Assembly: GCA_963924565.1 (NCBI GenBank)
Contig: OZ004610.1
Location: 28,458,001-28,522,000, forward strand
Length of the DNA: 64,000 nucleotides
Origin: Ascidiella aspersa
Taxonomy: Eukaryota
Reading direction: 5' to 3'
The position numbers were made by a program, and so were the translations under genes. The notes under the pieces were generated by a model, which was not told the DNA's origin, searched no databases, and worked only from the letters and a program-made list of their open reading frames with translations. Below, piece after piece: positions 9,701-44,500 of this stretch. Every line of letters begins with the position of its first letter. Positions within the stretch are counted from its first letter, which is position 1.

Positions 9701-12700
9701 AACGAAGATCGTTTTTCCCTGGTGTTATTATGCGACGATTAGCGCAACATCTGTGCTAGCTGTGTGCCAAGTCACCTAAAATACAAGTTGCGGTTGAGGG
9801 AAAATATGTTGTGTCAGCTGCACACTAAACACGTGGTCTTAGAATATGCTTATAGAGAACAATTTTGCGTTAACTATCTTTACAAAAAAGGACGACTTTA
9901 AAACGCGCACGACAGTCATCATTATACCACCTTTTAAGAATCTGATTCAGTTCAAAAAAATCCGTTGTTAACCAATATCTAATATTAGAGCAGACAGCGA
10001 ACAGCAAGGAGCATTAGCTGCGCCTAACTTCGACCTTTCAGCGTAGAAAAAGAAAGACGGTTTGACTTAGCGAACTGTTAATTGTCCAATTCACACTTAA
10101 TAATTAATCAGCCAATCTCAACAATTATCAAAAGAGATAAAATATATATTGCGTTTACGGTCGACCAAAAAATACAAAAACGGAGTGTTGCGTTAGATTT
10201 TGGTCACAATAGTTTTTTTTAAACCCCAGCCCCCTGGATACGCCACTGTGTCACATGATCAGTAACCCAAACCAACTAGGGGGGCTAGATAGTGTAAACA
10301 AACTCCAGCAAGTACGGGCGAAGCCCGAAAAAATTTACGTTTCGTGTATTCTAGACGCTAAAAACGGCGATTATTAGGAGCTTACGGCTGTTTAAAGTTG
10401 TCTATTTGACGTTAGAATATTGCAACACCTCGTTGACTTATTCACGTCCGATTGTCAAGTGATTTCAATTGCGCGCGAAACTCTATGGAATTGTGGTGTC
10501 AGAACAGCCTCTGTGACGTAACAATCACAAACTGTTGGACTTCGTTGTCAGCAAACTTAACGATGTTTATCAAACAAATTTGGTGATATTTGTATTTTAA
10601 TTTCGCCGATGGTATAAAGCGTGGCTTCAAAATCGCCCTTTTAGAACTCTGTATAATTAGCAAATTATTCAGCTGAAACTGAGCAAGAAAACCACACAAA
10701 CATGGCTTATTACTGACGGTAAGACGGCCATTTATTATCAGTTTAGCGGAAAGCTATAGTTCGCGGACGTTTTAATCTATGCTTCAAAATGCGACGGCCA
10801 AGCGCTCTTTTTCGAGATTGAGGCTAATAAAAAACATTGAATAGAGCGACCTGCGGTGAAGACGTTTGCTGTACCTTACAAGCTTGTTTTCTACGTTGTT
10901 GAAAATGTTTGTCCCAACAATAAAATATATTTTCGTTATTAAGCTTGATTAAGACTAGAGTAGTTGAGTTGTTGACAGACGAAATGCTAAATGAAACAAC
11001 GATAACGAGCGGTGATTAGGCGGCGATAAGCACCGACCTGTTTTCAACGCCAGGTGCAATGTTTGCGATGTAACATTGCAGCAATCACGGTTTTAGTTTT
11101 GTGATAATTGTTTACTGAGATTTCATAGGGGGGTATCAAGACTCCTAGATTTTGTTTTTTATTTATTTTTGGTGAGGCAATTTAATTTGTGATTGAAAAT
11201 TTATTGTATCCAGGTGATTTTCGCAAGTCTTATTACAGCAAACTTCAGTTCCGTTTTATAGTTTAGGTTTTCATATAAGCACACGGGACCCTGTTTGGTG
11301 ACCGAAAATAAGAGCACTTAAACCGTTATAAATAACTGCCCTGTGCTGTCGAATCGGTCCACCGAAAATGCTGATTTAGATAAAATATTCATTGACATGA
11401 GCAATGATAGCTATTTTTTTCGTTACAGCGATTTGCGTTGCAAGTTGTGTCATACGTCGCTCCTAACTTGCAACTGACAAGTTTTACCGAAGACAACACA
11501 ACAAGAGACGAAGAAGAGGTAACTTTACATGGAAAACCATATTGAGTTTATCGTTCTACGGCTATTTTTTTATGTGTTTAAATTGTTCGATATGAAATTT
11601 TGACACTATAGGTCTTTATCTACTTTTAACGTAATCCATTGGACAGCTTTAGAACTCGCATTTTTTTAAATAAACATCAGACATCCTGTAAGCTTAATTA
11701 CTCCGGTACTTTTTTACTATAAAATAGGTAAATCTGTTTTAACGATTTTAATTTTCGCGCTAGAAAACATTCAAATAGACCCGATCGAAAGCCATTAAAG
11801 GTTTTATTATCGGAAGAAACCCGTCTCCATTTAAAAAGGATTTTGTTGTGTTTTGTCGAAAAATAAAAAAAAATTGGCGGATATCAAGATACTTTTCAGA
11901 ATGTATTTCCTTTCTGTATGTCATTTTAGAAGCAATCACAACAAAAACTTATGCAGAGAATATAAATGCTGGGCAATGTACACGAACAAGAACATCTCTG
12001 TCGTATACAAACGCGATATCCGAACTAATTTTTTTGGCCTGATTGTTTATAACTGGGCAATCCGGCCATTTAATGACTCTGATTTTTTTAAATGTTTGAA
12101 TAATTTGCACTAACAAGCTTTCGTGATGATCAACCATTTCAATATTTATAAATCCAATATTGCATAAAAATATTTTAGATACCTCTATGTTTTCACGCGT
12201 TAATTTCAGGTTCTTTAAAACCTGCCATTAAAGGAAAATATATTACATGTTTCAAAAAGGTAGATTACAAAACTAAACGTTCTATAAAAAAATCACAGGT
12301 TTCTAAAAACAACAGGTTACAAAACCTGCCACGTGGTACAAAAATAGCAACTCTAGCAAGTTATAAGAAAATACAGATTACGTTAAAATCGCAGGTTGCA
12401 AACAACAATGATAGGTTACATTACATGTAAGAAAAAAAAACAAAGTTAAGAAAGTCATCACCTACTACAAAAATAATGACATGTTAACCAATCACTGGTG
12501 ACTAAACTGATGGCTAAAAAAAGTAAACTGAGGCTAAAAAAAAAACTAAACTGAGAAAAAAAATAATATTTTTTTTTACGATAATAAGAGTTCAATTTCC
12601 TAGCATCGAAAAGCAGAGAGCGACCCCCTCAGGAGTTGCGTCATCAAAGTCGGGATGGCCTTCCAGCTCATTCGAATCTGCGAACGCCTTGACGAAACAA

Positions 12701-13765
12701 TGACGTCATTGGAAAGCCCCTTTCTCGCCTTGCACGGCGGCGATGACGTCACTTGCGCGGTCGAGGGCTCCAGGATTTTGTACAGAACGGCCAGCAGCAA
12801 GGATAAGAAACTCAAGGTTGGATGTTTTTTTAATTTTGGAGGAATTTCCAAAGATTTTCAAATGCGGGTAACTTACCATAATACTCAATTGTACATCATT
12901 TCTCCGATTTTTCCGTTTTTTTTTTAATTCCCGAAATCATTTAATAACTTCTCAAAATACTTGACTTCGAAGACATTTTTTATACGTAAGATCGATGCTG
13001 CTATGTCAAAACAATATAGACTTTCTTGTCTCAGTCAAAATCAGTCACTATAGGTTCTAGTTTATAAAAGAGAATTATATTTCGCCAATCACGGCATCAT
13101 CAGTCTCTAAAAAACGAATACAAAATAATGTAAACACGTAAACCAGGTGGTAGACTTTAAAAATCATAGGAAAATAATCATAGAACCAAGAGCAACAAAC
13201 TACGCGACCAGGTTAAAAATATATAAGATAAAAGTTATAGGTATAGGGCTATAGAAAACCGGACCATCCTGCTACCCAAGTCTTGGGAAAAACAACAGCC
13301 AGCTGTGTTGGTAAAGCGAAAAGAAAAGGGAAAAAAGGGTGGCAAGAGGTGAAAACAAACACGATAAGGCAAACGGTAGAGGCTTTGTTGTCTCAGTCAA
13401 AATCAGTCACTATAGGTTCTATCTAGTTTATAAAAGAGAAATATATTTCGTCAATCACGGCATCATTAGTCTCTAAAAAACGAATACAAAGCTATGTCAA
13501 ATTGTGTTATGCATTTTTACTGAAATAATTAGATCCTATTTATGGTACATGAACTCTGATCGGCGTTATTATGTTAATTTTTCTTTGTGTCTAATTAAAA
13601 TGCTTGCGTCGTTTAACCGTTCAGGCAATACCGTAACGCTTATCGTCTAATTGTCCTCAGATATACGACGGCGTAATGCATGACGTCATTCACGAGTTAA
13701 AACCGGACAGGGAACGCTGCTTCCAAGACACACTGGACTGGCTAAAAGAACACATAGAAAAATAA
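6702..13765 (+). CDS. MGLL: Monoglyceride lipase-like alpha/beta hydrolase, copy a (8 coding exons, ~297 aa)
   Basis: Exons 6702-6720, 6876-6987, 7582-7688, 8399-8535, 8959-9069, 11429-11518, 12604-12816, 13661-13765; all GT-AG and phase-consistent. Motifs VNAQGFYLFCKYW, HGFGGH, HDHVGNGESEG, nucleophile elbow GQSMGG, HGGDD (catalytic Asp) and MHDVIHE (catalytic His). Confidence 0.9.
7060..7481. mobile_element. MITE, CCGATA-rich family
   Basis: Terminal inverted repeats TAGAGATGTCCGATA / TATCCGACATCCCTA with internal CCGATAC/GTATCGG motifs. Related pieces lie at ~20090-20388, 31838-32095, 33638-33735, 37480-37559, 47595-48117 and 55695-55791. Confidence 0.7.
9339..10248. mobile_element. Probable non-autonomous DNA transposon
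   Basis: Imperfect TIRs CAGGCGCGTAGC..GGGGGG and CCCCCTGGATACGCCACTG. CpG-rich insert inside MGLL-a intron 5, which is much longer than the equivalent intron of copy b. Confidence 0.45.
13070..13107 (-). ncRNA. Minimal type-I hammerhead ribozyme-like motif
   Basis: RNA GAGA-CUGAUGA-U-GCC(GUGAUU)GGC-GAAA-UAUA-A-U-UCUC. Stems I and II pair; position 16.1 is A instead of U. Confidence 0.7.
13436..13473 (-). ncRNA. Minimal type-I hammerhead ribozyme-like motif (degenerate)
   Basis: RNA GAGA-CUAAUGA-U-GCC(GUGAUU)GAC-GAAA-UAUA-U-U-UCUC. G5>A and one stem II mismatch; the UH cleavage site is intact. Confidence 0.65.
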
Positions 13766-14865
13766 AAATAAACTGATAAAACGACTTTGCCATAAATACA
13801 AGGGACGCTATTTTACTTACGAGGTTACCACAGTGACTCTTAAGAAGTATATACAATATTATACATGGCCTGTTTGGTGGAAAAAGATAAAAATATATGT
13901 ACGCACTTTGCAAATGCAAACGTTAGTTTGTAACTGTTAAATCGTAATGTGCCTTCGCAGTTTTTGAAATTTTGTGTTTTTTTGTGTTGTTGTTTTACTC
14001 TTGGCGGGCGTTACAAAGTGTTGTAAATTATTTTTTTACAACGTCTGTATGAGCATAGCAGGTATATAAACAATATTATTATTATTTAACTTACTCTTCG
14101 CTATTAACTACCACTGACAGTATGGCAACACCTCTAACCCAGTCATTTCAATTTTGTCAACTTAATATCCATACCGCCTTAGGATTAACATTAAAAAACA
14201 AATACAAAGATAAACATTTCTCGACACACAGAAAAAATAATTTATTAACTATTTTAAATTCCAAGTTCCGTATACAAACTGAAATAAAAGTCCTGCTGTT
14301 AAGGTTCGTTGCACATTTTTGAACTGATTCTTGTTTTGGGACAATCTACCTTTATTTATCGACTTATTGTTTTTATTGAACTGCAACCAAACTTGGTACA
14401 CAAAAGATTCACACACATGATATCTGTCCGGTTTTAGCAATTTATTATGCCAGTCATGCGTTAAGTAATATTTCACGCAACCTAAACAAATCTCCGTATA
14501 CTTCTTCAGACTTTTATTGTGACGCTATTTTTATTTATTGCTTTTATATTTATTAAGCGTTCCATGCGTAGTTGTGTTTTCGCAATATCTTGTTTTAACT
14601 TTTATGCTATCTATACAATCCTCAATATGTTTTTTGTTACTCTGGGTATAAAAGCTTCGCCATTTTGACAAGTTGATGATTTTTCTTTCCGTTGTTGTTA
14701 ATTGTTTTCCAGTATTTGTGGTTAAGTTAAGGGTAACTTTGAAGTGACAAACCGTAGAGAAGTTCGTTTTAAAAAAATTGTACTAATCGTGTATTTCCTT
14801 GTTTTGTTTTTAGGTTGTTATAGTCCGGGTCTTTATGTTAATATTATTAAAAATTTTATAACAAA

Positions 14866-17800
14866 ATGGATTCCGCAACAGAAGGTAATTAAGTTGTATA
14901 TCTCTAGGTTAATTTTGAAAATAAATTACATACAATTTGCAGTATATGTTTCAAACATTTGATATCTGTATTTCCATGTCGTTCTTATCTGTTTCTTATT
15001 AGTAAATTTGTGGCAAAAATACGGACGATTTTGATAATTGTTAAAATGCTTTGATTTTTTGTTCCAGCTCAGAACCACAAGACGTTCACAGGAAAGCCAT
15101 TTAGTGAAGTTGATCACATCGTAAATGCCCAAGGAATTTACCTGTTTTGCAAGTACTGGAAACCAGAAGGAGAAATAAAGTAGGTGCATAGTTGTGGGAC
15201 AGAATACCAAGCCTTTTTAAATTGATAATGAACGTTATGTTGATATTTTTTTTGGATAGTCCTCCTTTACTGAGCTAAGGCCTATTTAAAACGATTTACA
15301 ATAAATGTTACGATTTTACAAGGATGAAAAACCTACGAAAACATATGTTTTTGAAGATGGCTAACTGTTCATTATATGTGCGGGCTTTTCTTATTTGCAA
15401 ACTATGTTCAAATCTGTTTTATGTTACCTAAAATCATCAATGTTTTCCTTAGTATGTATATTTCTCTTTGGATGGTTGTAAAGCAGGGGTTCTTAAACCG
15501 CCCCTTTACACAATCTATCAAAACTCGGCCCCCCCTATGCAAATAATATGTGTTATAGTCTCAATGATCAGCATTACACAGACATAGCGTAAATAGAAAA
15601 AATTGAATCTAGTACAAAGAGGAGCTCAAATGTAAAGCCTTCTATATAAGCAAAAGCTGTTTGATAGGTTTTATTTAGCTAAAACGTTAGGTTCGCGTTG
15701 TAATTAAGCAAGCCAGCATCTGCAGTACAATAAAGTTGTTTATTATGTCACAATTACGAATTGTATGAAGGTGAATTGTAGATTCCATTCCAGAAAATAG
15801 TATTTTACACAGCACAACATATGCGGTAGTGTGCACGGAGCCTTTGGAATGAAACAATTCCCTCAAACGGGAAAAGCGTACTAATATAAGAAAAACTTTT
15901 ACCCGATTCGCACAAAAATATAGTTTCGAATACAGCATAACTTGATATCAAATAAATAAAAACAAAGTTTATATTTTACGAAAAATCTTTCGCGCCCCCT
16001 TGCAAACCCTTTACGCCCCCAGTTTATAAGCCCTGATATAGAGGTTTGTGAAAATCATCTTTGTTTGTATTGCCTGATAAAGGTCTTTTATTTAGTATAG
16101 TCGCAAAGGCTGTGAATGCAGCATTTACATTTTTTTTTTCAGATTTCTTCTTGGATGCCTTCACGGCTTCGGTGGTCACTGCGTGAGATTCGATGAGCTT
16201 GCTTCACGCATCACGACAATCGGGGGACTCGTGTTTTCACATGATCACAGTAGGTCAAAAGAAGTGAACGATTGAAAACGCACAAAAAAGGATTTAAGTT
16301 TAATGTTTCTCTGCATATATTTGGGTTACTTGCACCTAATAAGCTGAAACGTAATATAGCTAATGCAAAATATGTTCGAAAATTGTCCGAACGTTAACCA
16401 AGCATTTTTAACTTTATAATTTTTGTAAAACGTGTTGCTCAGTTTACAAAGGCACGGCATTTTTTAGCTGCCGTATTCGCATGTTGAACTTTTTTTAAGT
16501 ATTTAAAAACCCGTTTTATGACAAAGGTATAGTTTGAAGAAAAAAAAGGTTGGGTTACCTAATTAAATACTCCTTGTGCAATATTACGATCCCAAACTGG
16601 CAACAAAATTAGTAGCAAGCGGTCAACACTACTATTGCTGGTCACTGGTCAGCCAAGAGCCTCAAAAAAACTTGTCAGCTAGACGCAGTTTTTTCACCTT
16701 TGAAATAAACCAATTCTCTCGTCCTCGCAGTTGGCCATGGTGAAAGCGAAGGACCCAGGACGATAGTTGACGACTACCACTACTTGATTGACGACATGAA
16801 TCAACATACTGAGAAGATGAAAAAGGAATATCCCGGACTGCCAGTGTTTTTGTACGGACAGTCGATGGTAATACGCATTTCTTTGCTACAAATTTGTCAT
16901 TTAATGCAACTTTAACCAAAAATGCGTAGCGTTGTACAACTTCTTGATCAGCGGTTCACTAGCGTCCAAATCACATATTTTAGTTTACGAACATATGTCG
17001 GATTTCAAGCCCAAGGCATTTATATCATACGTAGGATGGTTTCGAGCAAGATTTTTTTTAAATTCTATGATTGAAAAATTATGTTAACCAGACTCAGACT
17101 ACATTCGACTTATTTTTGTAAATAAATCACTTGACAGCTTATGTACAGTAAGGATAGTTTATAAAAGTATTAATTTAAGTTTAAAATCCACTGTTCCTTT
17201 TGTCCTTAAATTTTTCTTGCGTTCAAAAGTGCCAGGGTCCTCCAGTGTTTCAAGTAAGCAAAAGGGCTCCGACAGTGAAACAATTTCGGAACCCAATGTA
17301 CTGGAGTCCATTCGCAAACCAAACTTTTTTTTGTACATTTCAGGGCGGGGCTCTGGCCTCTATCGCAGTTGTGGAAAAACCGGACTTGTACAAAGGCTTT
17401 ATATCAGTCGGAGGGATGTTCGTAAAGAATACATCGCTTCAATCACCGGTCACGGTATGAACCAATTATATTCCCATAAATCCGCATAGCAGTAACCTCA
17501 GAGTCGCGTTTATCAAAGGACGAGAAAATTTGACAAAACGTGTATATAATGAAAGATGCACATTGCATACACATGTGTGTGTTTACCACTCTGATCTAGC
17601 CCTTCTGAAGCTGCTTTTTGACCAACGATTACGGCTTACGCATAATTAGTACACCGAAAAGCCATCGCAGACTCGCCAAATCTGTCGATTAATGATGCAA
17701 GCAAGGCAGGAACAACCAGCCTGCAGTGAGGTTAGAACTCACGACCTCCGGACCTTCGCTCTACCAACTGAGCTACACAGGCTCAGAGAGGAGCGAGTCG

Positions 17801-41500: not shown

Positions 41501-44500
41501 GCAGATTCAACTTGGAAATTTCCAGCTGGCATTTTAATGCGCAACTGTCATCCCCTAATCACGTTCCTTACGCAGCATTACATTCGAAGCCATTTGTGTC
41601 TTGTAATGACAAGAGGTCTGGAGAGTGCCAATTCCAGAAACCGCTTTCTTTCGACTTATGCTGGTCGTTAAACTGGATTGAACAAAATTTTAAAGTGGAA
41701 AACGTGCGTTGACGTTTTAAGTGGTAAACGTGTGTTGTCCAAATGGCTGAAAAGCTTTGCGAAAACAAGTAGCACAGCTGACTACTCTTAAATGCTTTTA
41801 AACACACGAGTCAAATCTCGGCATGCTACAAAAACTTGCTGAAGGACTAAAGGCTATACTTTATTGCTAATTGCTAATTGCTTTTCTATCTTGTTGTTAC
41901 CACGTTTTTTTCTTGCATTTATTCTTTGTTTTCAATTTATTGTACTGAGAGCTTTCGGTGTCATTCACCCTGACGATGGCGACTTGCATAGGTTGCCGGA
42001 ACGTTGGTTATGAATTATACTTAGAGGAGCTGTTTATGATTATTATTAATCGAGTTTAACGTTTTACTTTTTGTACAGACAAACCAGCGACCATTTGATG
42101 GACCTTTCGCTGTACTCCAGCTCCAATGGCCTCCTTCCTAAGCGAAGCTCAAGGCACAAAGGTACGTCGTTTGGGAAACTTGCTTTAATGTCAAAAGACA
42201 AAAATTTACAAAATATCGTGTACAAGTAACTGTGCTTGTGATTGAACAAATCTGGTGAATGGCACCTCTTTGCAGAGCGGACAAATAGTGAACACTGCTG
42301 CGATAGATTTTATTAAACTCTTGCAAATAAACGCGCATATTATGCCGGAAAAATTGTATTTTAAAGTACACTTTGTACAGTTCTGTCTTTAATGAACCTT
42401 TAAGCCAAAAAAGGCGAGTAAATCGACATCATCTTGATAAAGACGTTTCTATACGTACTTGTATCATCATCAGTTAATGTCAAGATATTTTGCATTTAAA
42501 ACTGTATTGTATTTAAAACTACATAGACAAATCACTTTGTAGTTATCGGCCAGCATTTTAGAAACGTATGCACGAAGTGGTCTAGCAGTTGAATGCAACT
42601 GCGTAATTACGATTTGGGAGTCACAACTTGCAATATTTAATTTTTATTTTCAGGTCTCTCCATATCTTCGGACGATTCCGGGTACGACACTGTGTAAGTT
42701 CAAATTAAATTCGTTGCTGGCCTTATCAGAGCGTAAGACACACACAAAGCGAAACGGTCACTCTTTGACCGCTCCCTGCAAAGTAAATCAAACTTCAAGC
42801 GTTACGCAACGGTGACCTTTAGATGACCCAAATTATGCTGACGTCATCGTTAGACAGCTCTTTGCTTGACGCTCACATTAGTCGGCATTCTATCAATTTG
42901 ATGTGATTAGTCGTGACCGTGATTCATAAAATTAGCCCGTTTGTAGCACTATTAATAATATCGTGAAATTTTAGACGTGTTGACATCTGATTGGCTGGTA
43001 AATTTTTTGGCCTGCCATATGTCTGAAGCAGTTCTTTTCCAACCGTGTCGCGGAATATTTTAATTTAAAATATTTTGATTATTTAGGAATCTAATTTTGC
43101 TATAATGATAACTCTATCAATTCGATTTTTTATACGTTTTGAGGGAAAAGTAACATGTCGTGAAATATTTTTAAAAGTAAAGTTTCCTGCGTTATGCACA
43201 GCAAATTAATAATAATCTCTGATTGGTGTTTTAATTTATTTAATCATAGCGTAACAGCAAACTATAGCAAAAATGGTATTTTTTGAGTCGACGAGTCGCA
43301 TTGCTGCTTTCTGAGTCGCAAAAGCACAATGCAGCATGGCGATTCAGTCATATTAAATGTATATAGCCTCACAAAAAATTGGCCTTCTTTCAAGGACTAA
43401 AATAGCACGCAGCGAGCTATCCCTTTTGCGGTGTACCAAGGCTTTACCTGCTTGGCCCATCCTTGAATTAAGGGATAAGGGCGCTTTATCCACGAAACCT
43501 CGCGCTGCATTGACCTCGCTTTGTTATTCAAGCTGAACGCGTTTCAACGAAAACTGTCGCGGTTTTATGATAATATTCCCGGCGCAAAATTTATGGTTGA
43601 TTTATTTTAAGCTGCAAGAAGCGGGGCGAATCCTAAACGCGTAATTTGTCTCTTCGCATCAAATATTTGTTTCATCCTTGTCGATTTTTCGTTTAAATCT
43701 TTGTCTGCGCTCTTTTTTGAAGCAAAGCAGCCAGTTTTGTTAACTGAAATAAAAAAATCTATTCAATTCTTTTACAACCTGAAAACCGCGTTAGGGTTAC
43801 GATATAACGTTAAGAATAAGCGCTTAATTTTAAATAGGTGCTGTGCAACTTTCTAACATTGCTATACCCGGTGCTTGTTTTTGATCAAAACAAACATAAC
43901 CCGAGTACGACGTCTGTTGTATTAGCAAGCATTTCTGCTCTTGCGCAATCTCTCTATAGGCACCCTTTAGTTGAACAAGTTGCGTGTAATTATAACAGAG
44001 GCGCTTGACATTCGAGACCTTATATAAGCCTTACATAAACGCCGCTTGCTTCAAGTGGATTTTTTAAATGCGTCGACAAGTATTACCGCAAGTGGCTGAC
44101 ACACCGGCGCTCGACCGACCGTAAAATGAACAATTTTTGTGCTGACGACTCAATTTTTGCCGCGTCCACCTTGATGGTTAAAGCTGTACAAGATACCTGG
44201 GTGATTTTCGTACATCAGGAAGCTTCCAGTACTCGCTTTTTTCAACGTCATGTTAAAACCTGACAATTATTCTAATTTTAGTTTAGGTAAAATGTATATC
44301 GAATTTATAGTTAGACTTGTCCTTTTGGTCGTGCTTAGTACTTTTGCATGTTCATTTCATTATGAATGTGTAGTTTGTTAATTTTTTTTTTCTGTTAACA
44401 CTCTTTTGAAAAATAAAACGGATTGATTTTTTATGTTTCCGCTACCCTAAATATTTGCTAATGCCGTGCACTTAAATAACTAATTCCAAAACCTACACTT

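What the first reader, a model, noticed from the sequence alone, without database searches (positions are those of the whole stretch)
13000..13501. Retrozyme-like element: TSD-flanked insert with two hammerheads defining a 366-nt monomer
Seen: a 480-bp non-coding insert bounded by an 11-bp direct repeat. It contains one full unit plus a partial repeat, each carrying a minus-strand minimal hammerhead (consensus GAGA-CUGAUGA-U-GCC..GGC-GAAA-UAUA-UU-UCUC, with a palindromic stem III). The two copies carry different point mutations, so the consensus is a complete core. Established: metazoan non-LTR retrozymes and Penelope-like elements carry minimal type-I hammerheads in tandem units of a few hundred nt, which self-cleave (often as dimers) and can yield small circular RNAs. 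Inference: a member of a possibly undescribed circRNA-producing retrozyme family in this lineage.
Basis: partly seen in the sequence, partly recalled or inferred. Interest (0 to 1): 0.8.

Follow-up and report, generated by a model that had tools for sequence, protein, structure and literature searches.

The report
Dead Penelope-like retrotransposon end with hammerheads
The 480-bp insert is a broken-off tail of a Penelope-like retrotransposon that landed in a gene's intron as two overlapping end pieces, each with that family's known minimal hammerhead ribozyme, now mutated, so it is an ordinary relic and not a new circular-RNA element.

Summary
Window 13011-13490 is a 480-bp non-coding insert flanked by an exact 11-bp direct repeat. 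It carries two minus-strand minimal hammerhead motifs 366 nt apart, each with different core mutations.

The retrozyme reading does not hold. The 366-nt "monomer" is not a family unit: the tandem junction occurs once in the 308-Mb genome. Other copies run further 5' into an ORF with reverse transcriptase and GIY-YIG endonuclease domains, the Penelope-like element (PLE) architecture.

The family shows the PLE insertion hallmarks:
- a 3'-to-5' copy-number gradient, from about 300 down to about 20 copies;
- head-to-head pairs;
- partial tandems of differing lengths;
- a one-sided tail;
- variable TSDs.

The hammerhead is real at family level. The 40-nt consensus has 174 genome hits, 82 of them exact. 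It has the extra base between A9 and G10.1, a G10.1-C11.1 pair and a palindromic helix III. Related families show compensatory changes in stems I and II. This is the type described for PLEs in 2014.

In the window both copies are crippled, lie antisense to the host gene and gave no locus-specific RNA. Earlier reports of this scan reached the same verdict for other PLE end pieces in this genome. The finding is ordinary and of low interest.

The parts
13000..13010 (.). Target-site duplication, left copy on the plus strand (GCTATGTCAAA). It lies 3' of the element on its sense (minus) strand. The last 4 nt (TTTG on minus) overlap the family's own terminal ...CTGTTTTG, so the unambiguous TSD is 7-11 bp.
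   Evidence: D10, exact 11-mer. (the family ends at ...CTATACTGTTTTG). table 7 (reads from other copies diverge before 13007).
13011..13383 (-). The longer 5'-truncated copy: the last 373 nt of the PLE 3' UTR, containing hammerhead copy 1. It is 88-96% identical to other genomic copies.
   Evidence: In other copies homology continues 5' of 13383 into the ORF.
13384..13490 (-). A second, shorter 5'-truncated copy of the same 3' end, about 107 nt and lacking the last ~14 nt. It lies upstream on the sense strand as a partial tandem (pseudo-LTR-like) and contains hammerhead copy 2. The joint to the longer copy is at AAAG|CCTCT, with 1 nt of microhomology (G at 13383).
   Evidence: The junction sequence is unique in the genome.
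13491..13501 (.). Target-site duplication, right copy on the plus strand. It lies 5' of the element on its sense strand. It also resembles the element sequence just 5' of the truncation point (TTTGACATAGC against GTTTACATTAT), which is microhomology at the 5' junction.
13069..13108 (-). Minimal hammerhead copy 1. Stem I is AGAGA/UCUCU; the core is CUGAUGA plus an extra U; stem II is GCCG/UGGC; then GAAA and the loop UAUA. U16.1 is mutated to A (plus base 13075). The predicted cleavage site lies between 13074 and 13073.
   Evidence: table 3 shows that all reads from other copies carry the consensus base at 13075.
13435..13474 (-). Minimal hammerhead copy 2. The core G5 is mutated to A (CUAAUGA; plus base 13467) and stem II G11.2 is mutated to A (13451). 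The predicted cleavage site lies between 13440 and 13439.
12817..13660 (+). The host intron (GT..AG, 844 nt) that contains the insert. The element's sense strand is antisense to the host gene.
   Evidence: table 5 shows the spliced RNA joint 12814/13659 (cut +2), GT..AG. Host exon reads are all first-mate-on-minus.
12700..12816 (+). End of the upstream host exon, encoding ...LHGGDDVTCAVEGSRILYRTASSKDKKLK of a Hydrolase_4 (monoglyceride-lipase-like) protein. The last coding exon is 13661-13765.
   Evidence: PF12146, E 7.8e-6, profile positions 189-225 of 239. Reading frame taken.

Best explanation
The insert is a dead-on-arrival product of one retrotransposition event of a Penelope-like element (PLE) with a C-terminal GIY-YIG endonuclease.

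Proposed sequence of events:
1. The element's endonuclease nicked the intron.
2. Reverse transcription was primed on the target near the 3' end of the element RNA (...CUGUUUUG).
3. It copied back through the 3' UTR, including the hammerhead region, and stopped after 373 nt.
4. It switched template onto the 3' region of a second (or the same) RNA and copied another ~107 nt.
5. The cDNA was joined to the target at a patch of microhomology.
6. Staggered cuts gave the 7-11-bp TSD.

The result is a partial head-to-tail tandem, a miniature pseudo-LTR arrangement, with two hammerhead motifs 366 nt apart.

In source elements the hammerhead is the PLE-type minimal type-I motif. Its 1-bp helix III and palindromic AUAUAU can only form a stable helix III as a dimer. 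By analogy with published PLEs, it is thought to process multimeric or read-through element RNA.

In this copy nothing works. Copy 1 has lost the A15.1-U16.1 pair. Copy 2 has lost G5 and one stem II pair. The motif strand is antisense to the host gene, and no RNA specific to the locus was seen.

Shown here: the anatomy, family membership, copy number, truncation pattern, motif conservation and covariation, and the mutations. Inferred: the order of events in integration, and any cleavage activity.
For: Family and ORF:
- Genome search with the insert finds at least 46 scored copies out of 424 candidates. Nearly all start at the same 3' end and are truncated at variable 5' points: 373+, 342, 328, 316, 313, 308, 279, 276, 271, 241, 216, 170 and 69.
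- The alignment shows homology continuing 5' of the window's truncation point. It runs into an ORF with a CxxCxxC linker and a GIY-YIG motif (...YGIYIATCRLCKEQYVGQT...).
- The longest copy has a 551-aa open frame with RVT_1 (E 8.9e-5) and GIY-YIG (E 2.4e-3).
- Its homologues are 880-965-aa proteins with RVT_1 + GIY-YIG, E down to 4e-143. The best of them passes Pfam's RVT_1 threshold.

Insertion pattern:
- The DNA read-depth gradient across the insert runs from about 700-1000x at the 3' end to about 68x at the 5' end, against about 3x in the flanks.
- Head-to-head pairs and other partial tandems occur.
- A ~75-nt tail is present in roughly 40% of the copies examined, and in the three head-to-head pairs examined on one arm only.
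- Other copies have TSDs of 7-12 bp.
- The window's tandem junction is unique in the genome.

Hammerhead:
- The 40-mer has 174 hits, 82 exact, control 0.
- In related families stem I G-C changes to A-U (7 against 6 sequences) and the fourth stem II pair changes from G.U to U-A. 88% of cells are paired against 46-65% in slid controls, and 0 of 500 shuffles reach the observed score.
- Motif columns vary less than the rest of the 3' UTR: 1.6% against 3.6%.
- Features match the published PLE min-HHR criteria (PMC4209133) and the published PLE insertion architecture (PMC8557442; PMC11167929).
Against: - No intact full-length copy of this exact family was found. The longest ORF is 551 aa, in a copy that is 5'-truncated and has a frameshift. 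Autonomy of the family therefore rests on homology.
- Pfam scores of the family's own ORF are below the gathering thresholds.
- The tail is about 75 nt, against the 30-40 nt described in the literature.
- Rfam hammerhead models give no hit.
- No self-cleavage was tested, and RNA reads show no pile-up of ends at the predicted site, though depth was low.
- Covariation rests on two base pairs in related sequences that share ancestry.
Confidence: 0.9

Rival explanations
1. A genuine non-autonomous non-LTR retrozyme. In this view a 366-nt non-coding unit propagates as tandem repeats, is cut out by its two hammerheads and circularised, and this locus is a 1.3-mer of it.
For: - Two hammerhead motifs lie in direct orientation 366 nt apart inside a TSD-bounded non-coding insert.
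- The size falls in the 170-400-nt range reported for metazoan retrozymes (PMC7229834).
- A 2026 preprint derives animal retrozymes from PLE pLTRs.
Against: - The unit junction is unique in the genome.
- No other copy has a 366-nt period. Other copies extend 5' into a coding region.
- The motif is the atypical minimal PLE type, not the canonical type-I motif with loop-loop contacts that defines metazoan retrozymes.
- Both motifs are mutated in core positions.
- There were no locus-specific RNA reads and no back-joined reads.
Confidence: 0.03
2. The inserted RNA came from a short non-coding derivative of the PLE, a SINE-like parasite mobilised in trans by PLE proteins, and not from an autonomous element truncated at insertion.
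For: - ORF-bearing copies of this family are few, about 8-10 pieces and none intact, while 3' ends number in the hundreds.
- A discrete short form does exist. It is about 127 nt, has the 13-nt leader TTCATTCGAATTA directly before the hammerhead, gives 68 genome hits and has its own TSDs.
- Non-autonomous PLE derivatives are known in other lineages.
Against: - The window's copy does not carry the short-form leader.
- Its 5' end at 373 nt is one of a continuum of truncation points, not a discrete class.
- Sequence 5' of that point in other copies is contiguous with the ORF.
Confidence: 0.06
3. The hammerhead-like motif is a chance match in AT-rich repeat DNA and has no structural meaning.
For: - Rfam's hammerhead covariance models find nothing at E<=10.
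- The motif is short. The MFE fold of the monomer is not the hammerhead fold.
- No cleavage ends were seen in RNA reads.
Against: - A loose core pattern is enriched in the window: 7 overlapping matches at two places against 0.85 expected.
- Diverged sister families were found with a pattern that stops at position 10.4. They still keep the 3' strand of stem II, GAAA, the palindromic loop, UH and a compensated stem I.
- All four non-descriptor criteria of PMC4209133 are met.
Confidence: 0.01

Closest known systems
Penelope-like elements with C-terminal GIY-YIG endonuclease (canonical EN+ PLEs; the CxxCxxC linker suggests a Neptune-like clade) and their pseudo-LTR minimal hammerheads (Cervera & de la Pena 2014, PMC4209133)
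   Same: - A single ORF with RT followed by GIY-YIG.
- Frequent 5' truncation and partial tandems forming pseudo-LTRs.
- An adjacent inverted 5'-truncated copy, and a tail at one end.
- The hammerhead near the 3' end has a 5-bp helix I and no defined loop 1, an unpaired base between A9 and G10.1, a G10.1-C11.1 pair, and a 1-bp helix III with a palindromic loop.
- Most genomic motifs are single, in truncated copies, or paired on opposite strands 100-700 bp apart.
   Different: - The tail here is about 75 nt rather than 30-40 nt.
- No intact full-length copy of this particular family was found.
- Clade placement was not tested by phylogeny.
- The window's copy is only 480 bp of 3' UTR with both motifs mutated.
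Metazoan non-LTR retrozymes (Cervera & de la Pena 2020, PMC7229834)
   Same: - Non-coding, low-GC repeats of a few hundred nt with type-I hammerheads in direct orientation.
- TSDs longer than 4 bp.
- They coexist with PLEs and are probably mobilised by them.
   Different: [quoted passage not shown] They carry canonical hammerheads and are expressed as circRNAs.
- Here the period is private to one locus, the motif is the minimal PLE variant, and the parent element is coding.
- No circle was detected.
5'-truncated, template-switched LINE insertions (target-primed reverse transcription products)
   Same: - A constant 3' end with variable 5' truncation.
- A TSD.
- Microhomology at the 5' junction and at the internal template-switch junction.
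   Different: - There is no poly(A) tail.
- The endonuclease is GIY-YIG.
- Insertions form head-to-tail and head-to-head arrangements in which both arms keep the 3' end. This differs from L1 twin-priming inversions.

Membership tests
Penelope-like element (EN+ PLE) | Single ORF with a PLE/TERT-like reverse transcriptase followed by a GIY-YIG endonuclease | tested here: met
   This is seen in longer family copies, not in the window's fragment. The 551-aa frame has RVT_1 (E 8.9e-5) and GIY-YIG (E 2.4e-3), both below Pfam cut-offs. Homologues of 880-965 aa carry RVT_1 + GIY-YIG with E down to 4e-143. Homologue P0001 passes the RVT_1 cut-off.
Penelope-like element (EN+ PLE) | Partial tandem insertions (pseudo-LTR) and frequent 5' truncation | tested here: met
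   The window has a 107-nt copy followed by a 373-nt copy inside one TSD. Truncation points form a series. DNA depth shows a 3'-to-5' gradient. Another partial tandem has 164-nt spacing.
Penelope-like element (EN+ PLE) | Inverted 5'-truncated copy adjacent to the insertion, and a tail extension at one end only | tested here: met
   Head-to-head pairs occur at several loci. In L078, L082 and L083 one arm carries the ~75-nt extension and the other ends at ...CTGTTTTG. The window's own copy has neither feature.
Penelope-like element (EN+ PLE) | Phylogenetic placement of the RT within PLE clades | not tested
   No tree was built. The CxxCxxC linker before the endonuclease only hints at a Neptune-like clade.
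Hammerhead ribozyme, minimal type-I PLE variant | Catalytic core CUGANGA ... GAAA ... UH in type-I order with stems I and II | tested here: met
   The family consensus has it: 82 exact and 174 near-exact 40-mers. The window's two copies do not meet it: copy 1 has U16.1>A, and copy 2 has G5>A and a broken stem II pair.
Hammerhead ribozyme, minimal type-I PLE variant | Unpaired nucleotide between 9 and 10.1, a G10.1-C11.1 pair, and palindromic 15.x-16.x/loop 3 (criteria of PMC4209133) | tested here: met
   The extra U, the GCC/GGC stem and A-UAUA-U are present in family A and in sister families. GAAAUAUAUUUC is a perfect 12-nt palindrome, and the cofolded dimer pairs through it.
Hammerhead ribozyme, minimal type-I PLE variant | Compensatory changes in stems | tested here: met
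   Two of 10 pairs change on both sides. 88% of cells are paired against 46-65% when slid, and 0 of 500 shuffles reach the observed score. The evidence is modest because the sequences are related.
Hammerhead ribozyme, minimal type-I PLE variant | Self-cleavage at the predicted site | not testable with these tools
   No pile-up of RNA read ends at the site, at low depth. Published PLE motifs cleave weakly and mostly as dimers, and likewise left no read ends at the cleavage site in RNA-seq.
Hammerhead ribozyme, minimal type-I PLE variant | Match to curated Rfam hammerhead models | tested here: not met
   No hammerhead family was reported at E<=10 over 11000-15500. This is expected for helix-III-less variants.
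Metazoan non-LTR retrozyme | A fixed non-coding unit repeated head-to-tail across the family | tested here: not met
   The window's unit junction occurs once in the genome. Other copies lack the second repeat and extend into coding sequence.
Metazoan non-LTR retrozyme | Canonical type-I hammerhead with loop 1-loop 2 contacts | tested here: not met
   Helix I is 5 bp, open and without a loop 1, and helix III is 1 bp. This is the atypical PLE type by the distinction drawn in PMC7229834.
Metazoan non-LTR retrozyme | Expression as unit-length linear and circular RNA | tested here: inconclusive
   One RNA run was sampled at about 6%. All reads over the insert carry other copies' letters, the flanking intron has zero depth, and there are no back-joints. 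This cannot exclude rare or tissue-specific RNA.

The most novel reading that the evidence does not exclude
Where their ribozyme cores are intact, partial-tandem PLE end pieces like this one may be transcribed, cut by dimeric hammerheads and circularised. The discrete ~127-nt short form (13-nt leader + hammerhead + 3' end) might do the same. Decaying PLE tails would then be a standing source of new retrozyme-like small RNAs. That would catch the birth of animal retrozymes from PLE pLTRs in the act.
Probability: 0.05. Interest if true: 0.5.

Novelty: new member of a known kind. Interest (0 to 1): 0.12.

Why it matters
It matters little by itself. It is one more decayed copy of a retrotransposon class whose hammerheads have been known since 2014.

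Its use is as annotation. It explains 491 bp of an 844-bp intron of a lipase-like gene. It also warns against reading every pair of nearby minimal hammerheads as a retrozyme.

The family is a clean, fairly young example of PLE integration by-products: partial tandems of arbitrary length, head-to-head arms, a one-sided tail, and a short derivative. It could serve studies of how PLEs integrate, and of whether animal retrozymes arise from PLE ends.

Tried and rejected
- Rfam scan of 11000-15500 at E<=10: no hammerhead family, only chance-level hits to snoRNA, CRISPR-DR and hairpin models.
- A covariance model built from this and sister families, run over the whole window with filters off: it found only the two copies already in its seed. 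It therefore adds no independent support, and it does not reach the other hammerhead families that other notes report in this window.
- Search for the window's tandem junction elsewhere in the genome: only the window itself. This rejects a propagating 366-nt unit.
- Looked for head-to-tail arrays of the short form among its 68 hits: none, only three head-to-head pairs.
- Tested whether the shared sequence 3' of many copies was the 5' part of a downstream tandem unit: homology stops after about 75 nt, so it is a tail.
- Looked for an intact full-length copy. The best copy covers residues 210-930 of a 930-aa homologue, with a frameshift.
- Read laying, for an empty site, cleavage ends and circle joints: DNA depth in the flanks was only about 3x and RNA depth about 30x, all from other copies, so there is no evidence either way on polymorphism or cleavage. 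A 7%-divergent contig of another run of the same species label keeps the right-hand junction, which suggests an old insertion.
- The organism's name is coded in the tools and was not pursued.

Full report
**What is there**

Window 13011-13490 is a 480-bp, ORF-free stretch bounded by an exact 11-bp direct repeat, GCTATGTCAAA at 13000-13010 and 13491-13501. Inside it, 13009-13134 and 13371-13500 are about 90% alike, with spacing of 362-366 nt.

Read on the minus strand, each repeat carries a hammerhead-shaped motif:
- Copy 1, 13108->13069: AGAGA-CUGAUGA-U-GCCGUGAUUGGC-GAAA-UAUA-AU-UCUCU.
- Copy 2, 13474->13435: AGAGA-CUAAUGA-U-GCCGUGAUUGAC-GAAA-UAUA-UU-UCUCU.

**It is a repeat family, and the family is longer than the insert**

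- A search of the window's own 308-Mb assembly with the insert gave 46 scored matches out of 424 candidates.
- Almost all matches begin at the same end, plus-strand position 1 of the insert. That end is the 3' end on the hammerhead strand.
- They stop at variable distances: 373+, 342, 328, 316, 313, 308, 279, 276, 271, 241, 216, 170 and 69 nt. This is the signature of 5'-truncated reverse-transcribed copies.
- None of the other loci has the second, partial repeat.
- When the near-full copies are aligned with flanks, their homology continues 5' of the point where the window's long copy stops, for at least another 700 nt.
- That extra sequence holds an open frame with a CxxCxxC motif followed by ...YGIYIATCRLCKEQYVGQT..., a GIY-YIG endonuclease signature.
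- The longest copy has a 551-aa open frame with Pfam RVT_1 (E 8.9e-5) and GIY-YIG (E 2.4e-3). Both scores are below Pfam's cut-offs.
- The protein's relatives in public data are 880-965-aa proteins annotated with RVT_1 and GIY-YIG, with E down to 4e-143. The best is 45% identical and from the ascidian Phallusia. That relative passes the RVT_1 cut-off in my own scan.
- RT followed by a C-terminal GIY-YIG endonuclease is the architecture of canonical Penelope-like elements (PMC4209133; PMC8557442).

**The family behaves like a PLE**

The literature lists four features: frequent 5' truncation, partial tandems forming pseudo-LTRs, an adjacent inverted 5'-truncated copy, and a short tail at only one end. 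It also reports reverse transcription starting at internal sites of the RNA. All four features are seen here.
- **Truncation.** DNA reads of the same species laid at >=90% likeness pile up to about 700-1000x over the last 100 nt. Depth falls stepwise to about 68x at the 5' end of the long copy, against about 3x in the unique flanks. That is roughly 300 copies of the extreme 3' end and about 20 of the region 370 nt upstream.
- **Head-to-head pairs.** In these, both arms keep the 3' end.
- **Tail.** Roughly 40% of the copies examined carry an extra ~75 nt after ...CTGTTTTG (CTACCATTCGAAGTC...). Homology stops there, so it is a tail and not a downstream unit. In the three head-to-head pairs examined, only one arm has it.
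- **TSDs.** Other copies have TSDs of 7-12 bp.
- **Other partial tandems.** At least one other exists, with a different spacing of 164 nt.

**The 366-nt 'monomer'**

On the sense (minus) strand the insert reads as follows:
1. TSD;
2. a 107-nt piece of the 3' end, which lacks the last ~14 nt;
3. a joint at AAAG|CCTCT;
4. a 373-nt piece of the same 3' end;
5. TSD.

Both pieces are 5'-truncated fragments of the PLE 3' UTR. The 40-nt sequence across the joint occurs once in the genome, in the window itself. The 366-nt spacing is therefore private to this insertion and is not a unit that propagates.

A single TSD around both pieces argues for one event. The likely course is target-primed reverse transcription, a stop after 373 nt, a template switch onto the 3' region of another RNA molecule, and end-joining at microhomology. 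The 5' TSD copy TTTGACATAGC resembles the element's own GTTTACATTAT at that point. This order of events is inferred, not shown.

**Is the hammerhead real?**

It is real at family level.
- **Abundance.** The 40-nt consensus AGAGACUGAUGAUGCCGUGAUUGGCGAAAUAUAUUUCUCU has 174 genome matches within 3 mismatches, 82 of them exact, and none for the reversed control.
- **Palindrome.** GAAAUAUAUUUC is a perfect 12-nt palindrome, and two copies cofold through it.
- **Helix I.** It is 5 bp and open, as in their PLE motifs.
- **Sister families.** I retrieved these with a pattern that ends at position 10.4, so everything 3' of that is free of ascertainment. They keep GGC, GAAA, the palindromic loop, UH and a stem I 3' strand.
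- **Covariation.** On a 16-sequence alignment, stem I pair 7-44 is G-C in 7 sequences and A-U in 6. The fourth stem II pair is U-A in 5 and G.U in 3. 88% of cells pair, against 46-65% when partners are slid. 0 of 500 shuffles reach the observed covariation score. The sequences are related, so this support is modest.
- **Conservation.** Within the family, motif columns vary less than the upstream 3' UTR: 1.6% against 3.6%.
- **Negative results.** Rfam's hammerhead models do not see the motif. My own model finds only the two copies that were in its seed.

**State of the window's copy**

- **Copy 1** has U16.1>A (plus base 13075). All reads from other copies carry the consensus base there (table 3).
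- **Copy 2** has G5>A (13467) and G11.2>A (13451), plus a 4-nt duplication downstream.
- **Expected effect.** From the classical mutagenesis literature, which I recall and did not test here, G5 and the A15.1-U16.1 pair are required for activity.
- **Location and orientation.** The insert lies in an 844-nt GT..AG intron (12817-13660) of a plus-strand gene. The flanking exon matches Hydrolase_4, a monoglyceride-lipase-like family. The hammerhead strand is thus antisense to the host transcript.
- **RNA.** In the stranded RNA run the exons are covered and spliced. The intron flanks have zero depth. Every read over the insert carries other copies' letters. No read ends pile up at the predicted cleavage site, and there are no back-joined reads. 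Depth was low, because about 6% of one run was sampled, so this is weak negative evidence. The anole PLE study likewise found no RNA-seq reads beginning or ending at the predicted HHR cleavage site.
- **Age.** A contig from another run of the same species label, 7% divergent, keeps the right-hand junction, so the insertion is probably old.

**Comparison with known systems**

The closest match is the canonical EN+ PLE with pLTR min-HHRs (2014). The membership features I could test are met at family level.

Metazoan non-LTR retrozymes are defined by a fixed non-coding tandem unit, canonical type-I hammerheads with loop-loop contacts, and abundant circRNAs. The first two features were tested and not met, and the third is inconclusive. 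I therefore do not file the insert as a retrozyme.

**Earlier notes of this scan**

I consulted them after I had already found the GIY-YIG ORF. They report other truncated PLE end pieces with hammerheads in this genome and reached the same kind of verdict. They agree with my reading and did not shape it.

**Verdict**

The insert is an ordinary, decayed, 5'-truncated partial-tandem insertion of a Penelope-like element that carries that class's known minimal hammerhead. It is a new member of a known kind, of low interest.

Noticed in passing
Genome loci L044-L057 (e.g. L046 = G000:C1:11113532-11116561, element from locus position ~1501): A discrete short form of the family, about 127 nt. It has the 13-nt leader TTCATTCGAATTA directly in front of hammerhead stem I and then the normal 3' end. 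It gives 68 genome hits within 2 mismatches. Some have their own TSDs (12 bp in L046, 9 bp in L053), and many have an inverted truncated copy upstream. About a quarter of DNA reads crossing window position 13108 switch into this leader. It may be a non-autonomous mini-derivative. No head-to-tail arrays were seen.
   Followed up: partly
L004:1898-1975 and many other loci: A ~75-nt extension (CTACCATTCGAAGTCATTGTCGTCACTAACG...GAGATATCTTC) follows the usual 3' end ...CTGTTTTG in roughly 40% of the copies examined. It is also conserved in diverged sister families. In the three head-to-head pairs examined it sits on one arm only. It is longer than the 30-40-bp PLE 'tail' described in the literature.
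   Followed up: partly
L058-L077 (small loci fetched): Sister PLE families with variant hammerheads. Stem I is AGAAA/UUUCU with cleavage-site base A instead of U, stem II closes with U-A, and loop 2 ranges from 3 to 9 nt. Several copies have GUAA instead of GAAA.
   Followed up: partly
G000 contig 1, about 2672578-2707501: Four copies of the element, in mixed orientation, at successive distances of about 11.5 kb. Two of them (L019, L020) have identical flanks, which suggests a segmental repeat that carries the element.
   Followed up: no
window 42436-42473 (minus strand): Another CUGAUGA...GAAA...UH pattern match, the second of the two places the loose core pattern hit in the window. It belongs to a region that another first-stage note flags for hammerheads near DEPTOR exons. 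My family-specific covariance model does not detect it.
   Followed up: no
window 12500-12580: A short run of ~21-23-nt direct repeats (TAAACTGAGGCTAAAAAAA-like) and A/T runs, upstream of the hydrolase exon.
   Followed up: no
window 12700-12710, 12743-12753, 13680-13690: The palindrome ATGACGTCA (containing the CRE-like core TGACGTCA) occurs three times. All three are inside coding exons of the hydrolase gene.
   Followed up: no
window 13452-13900 against run X2 (table 8): A contig from another run with the same species label differs at 33 of 449 positions, with 7 gaps (about 7%), yet keeps the insert's right junction. Either haplotype diversity is very high or the label covers divergent lineages.
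   Followed up: no
whole genome: The genome holds many PLE families: at least 81 scored matches and 662 candidates to this RT-EN protein at 37-62% identity. Several have open frames of 600-800 aa.
   Followed up: no
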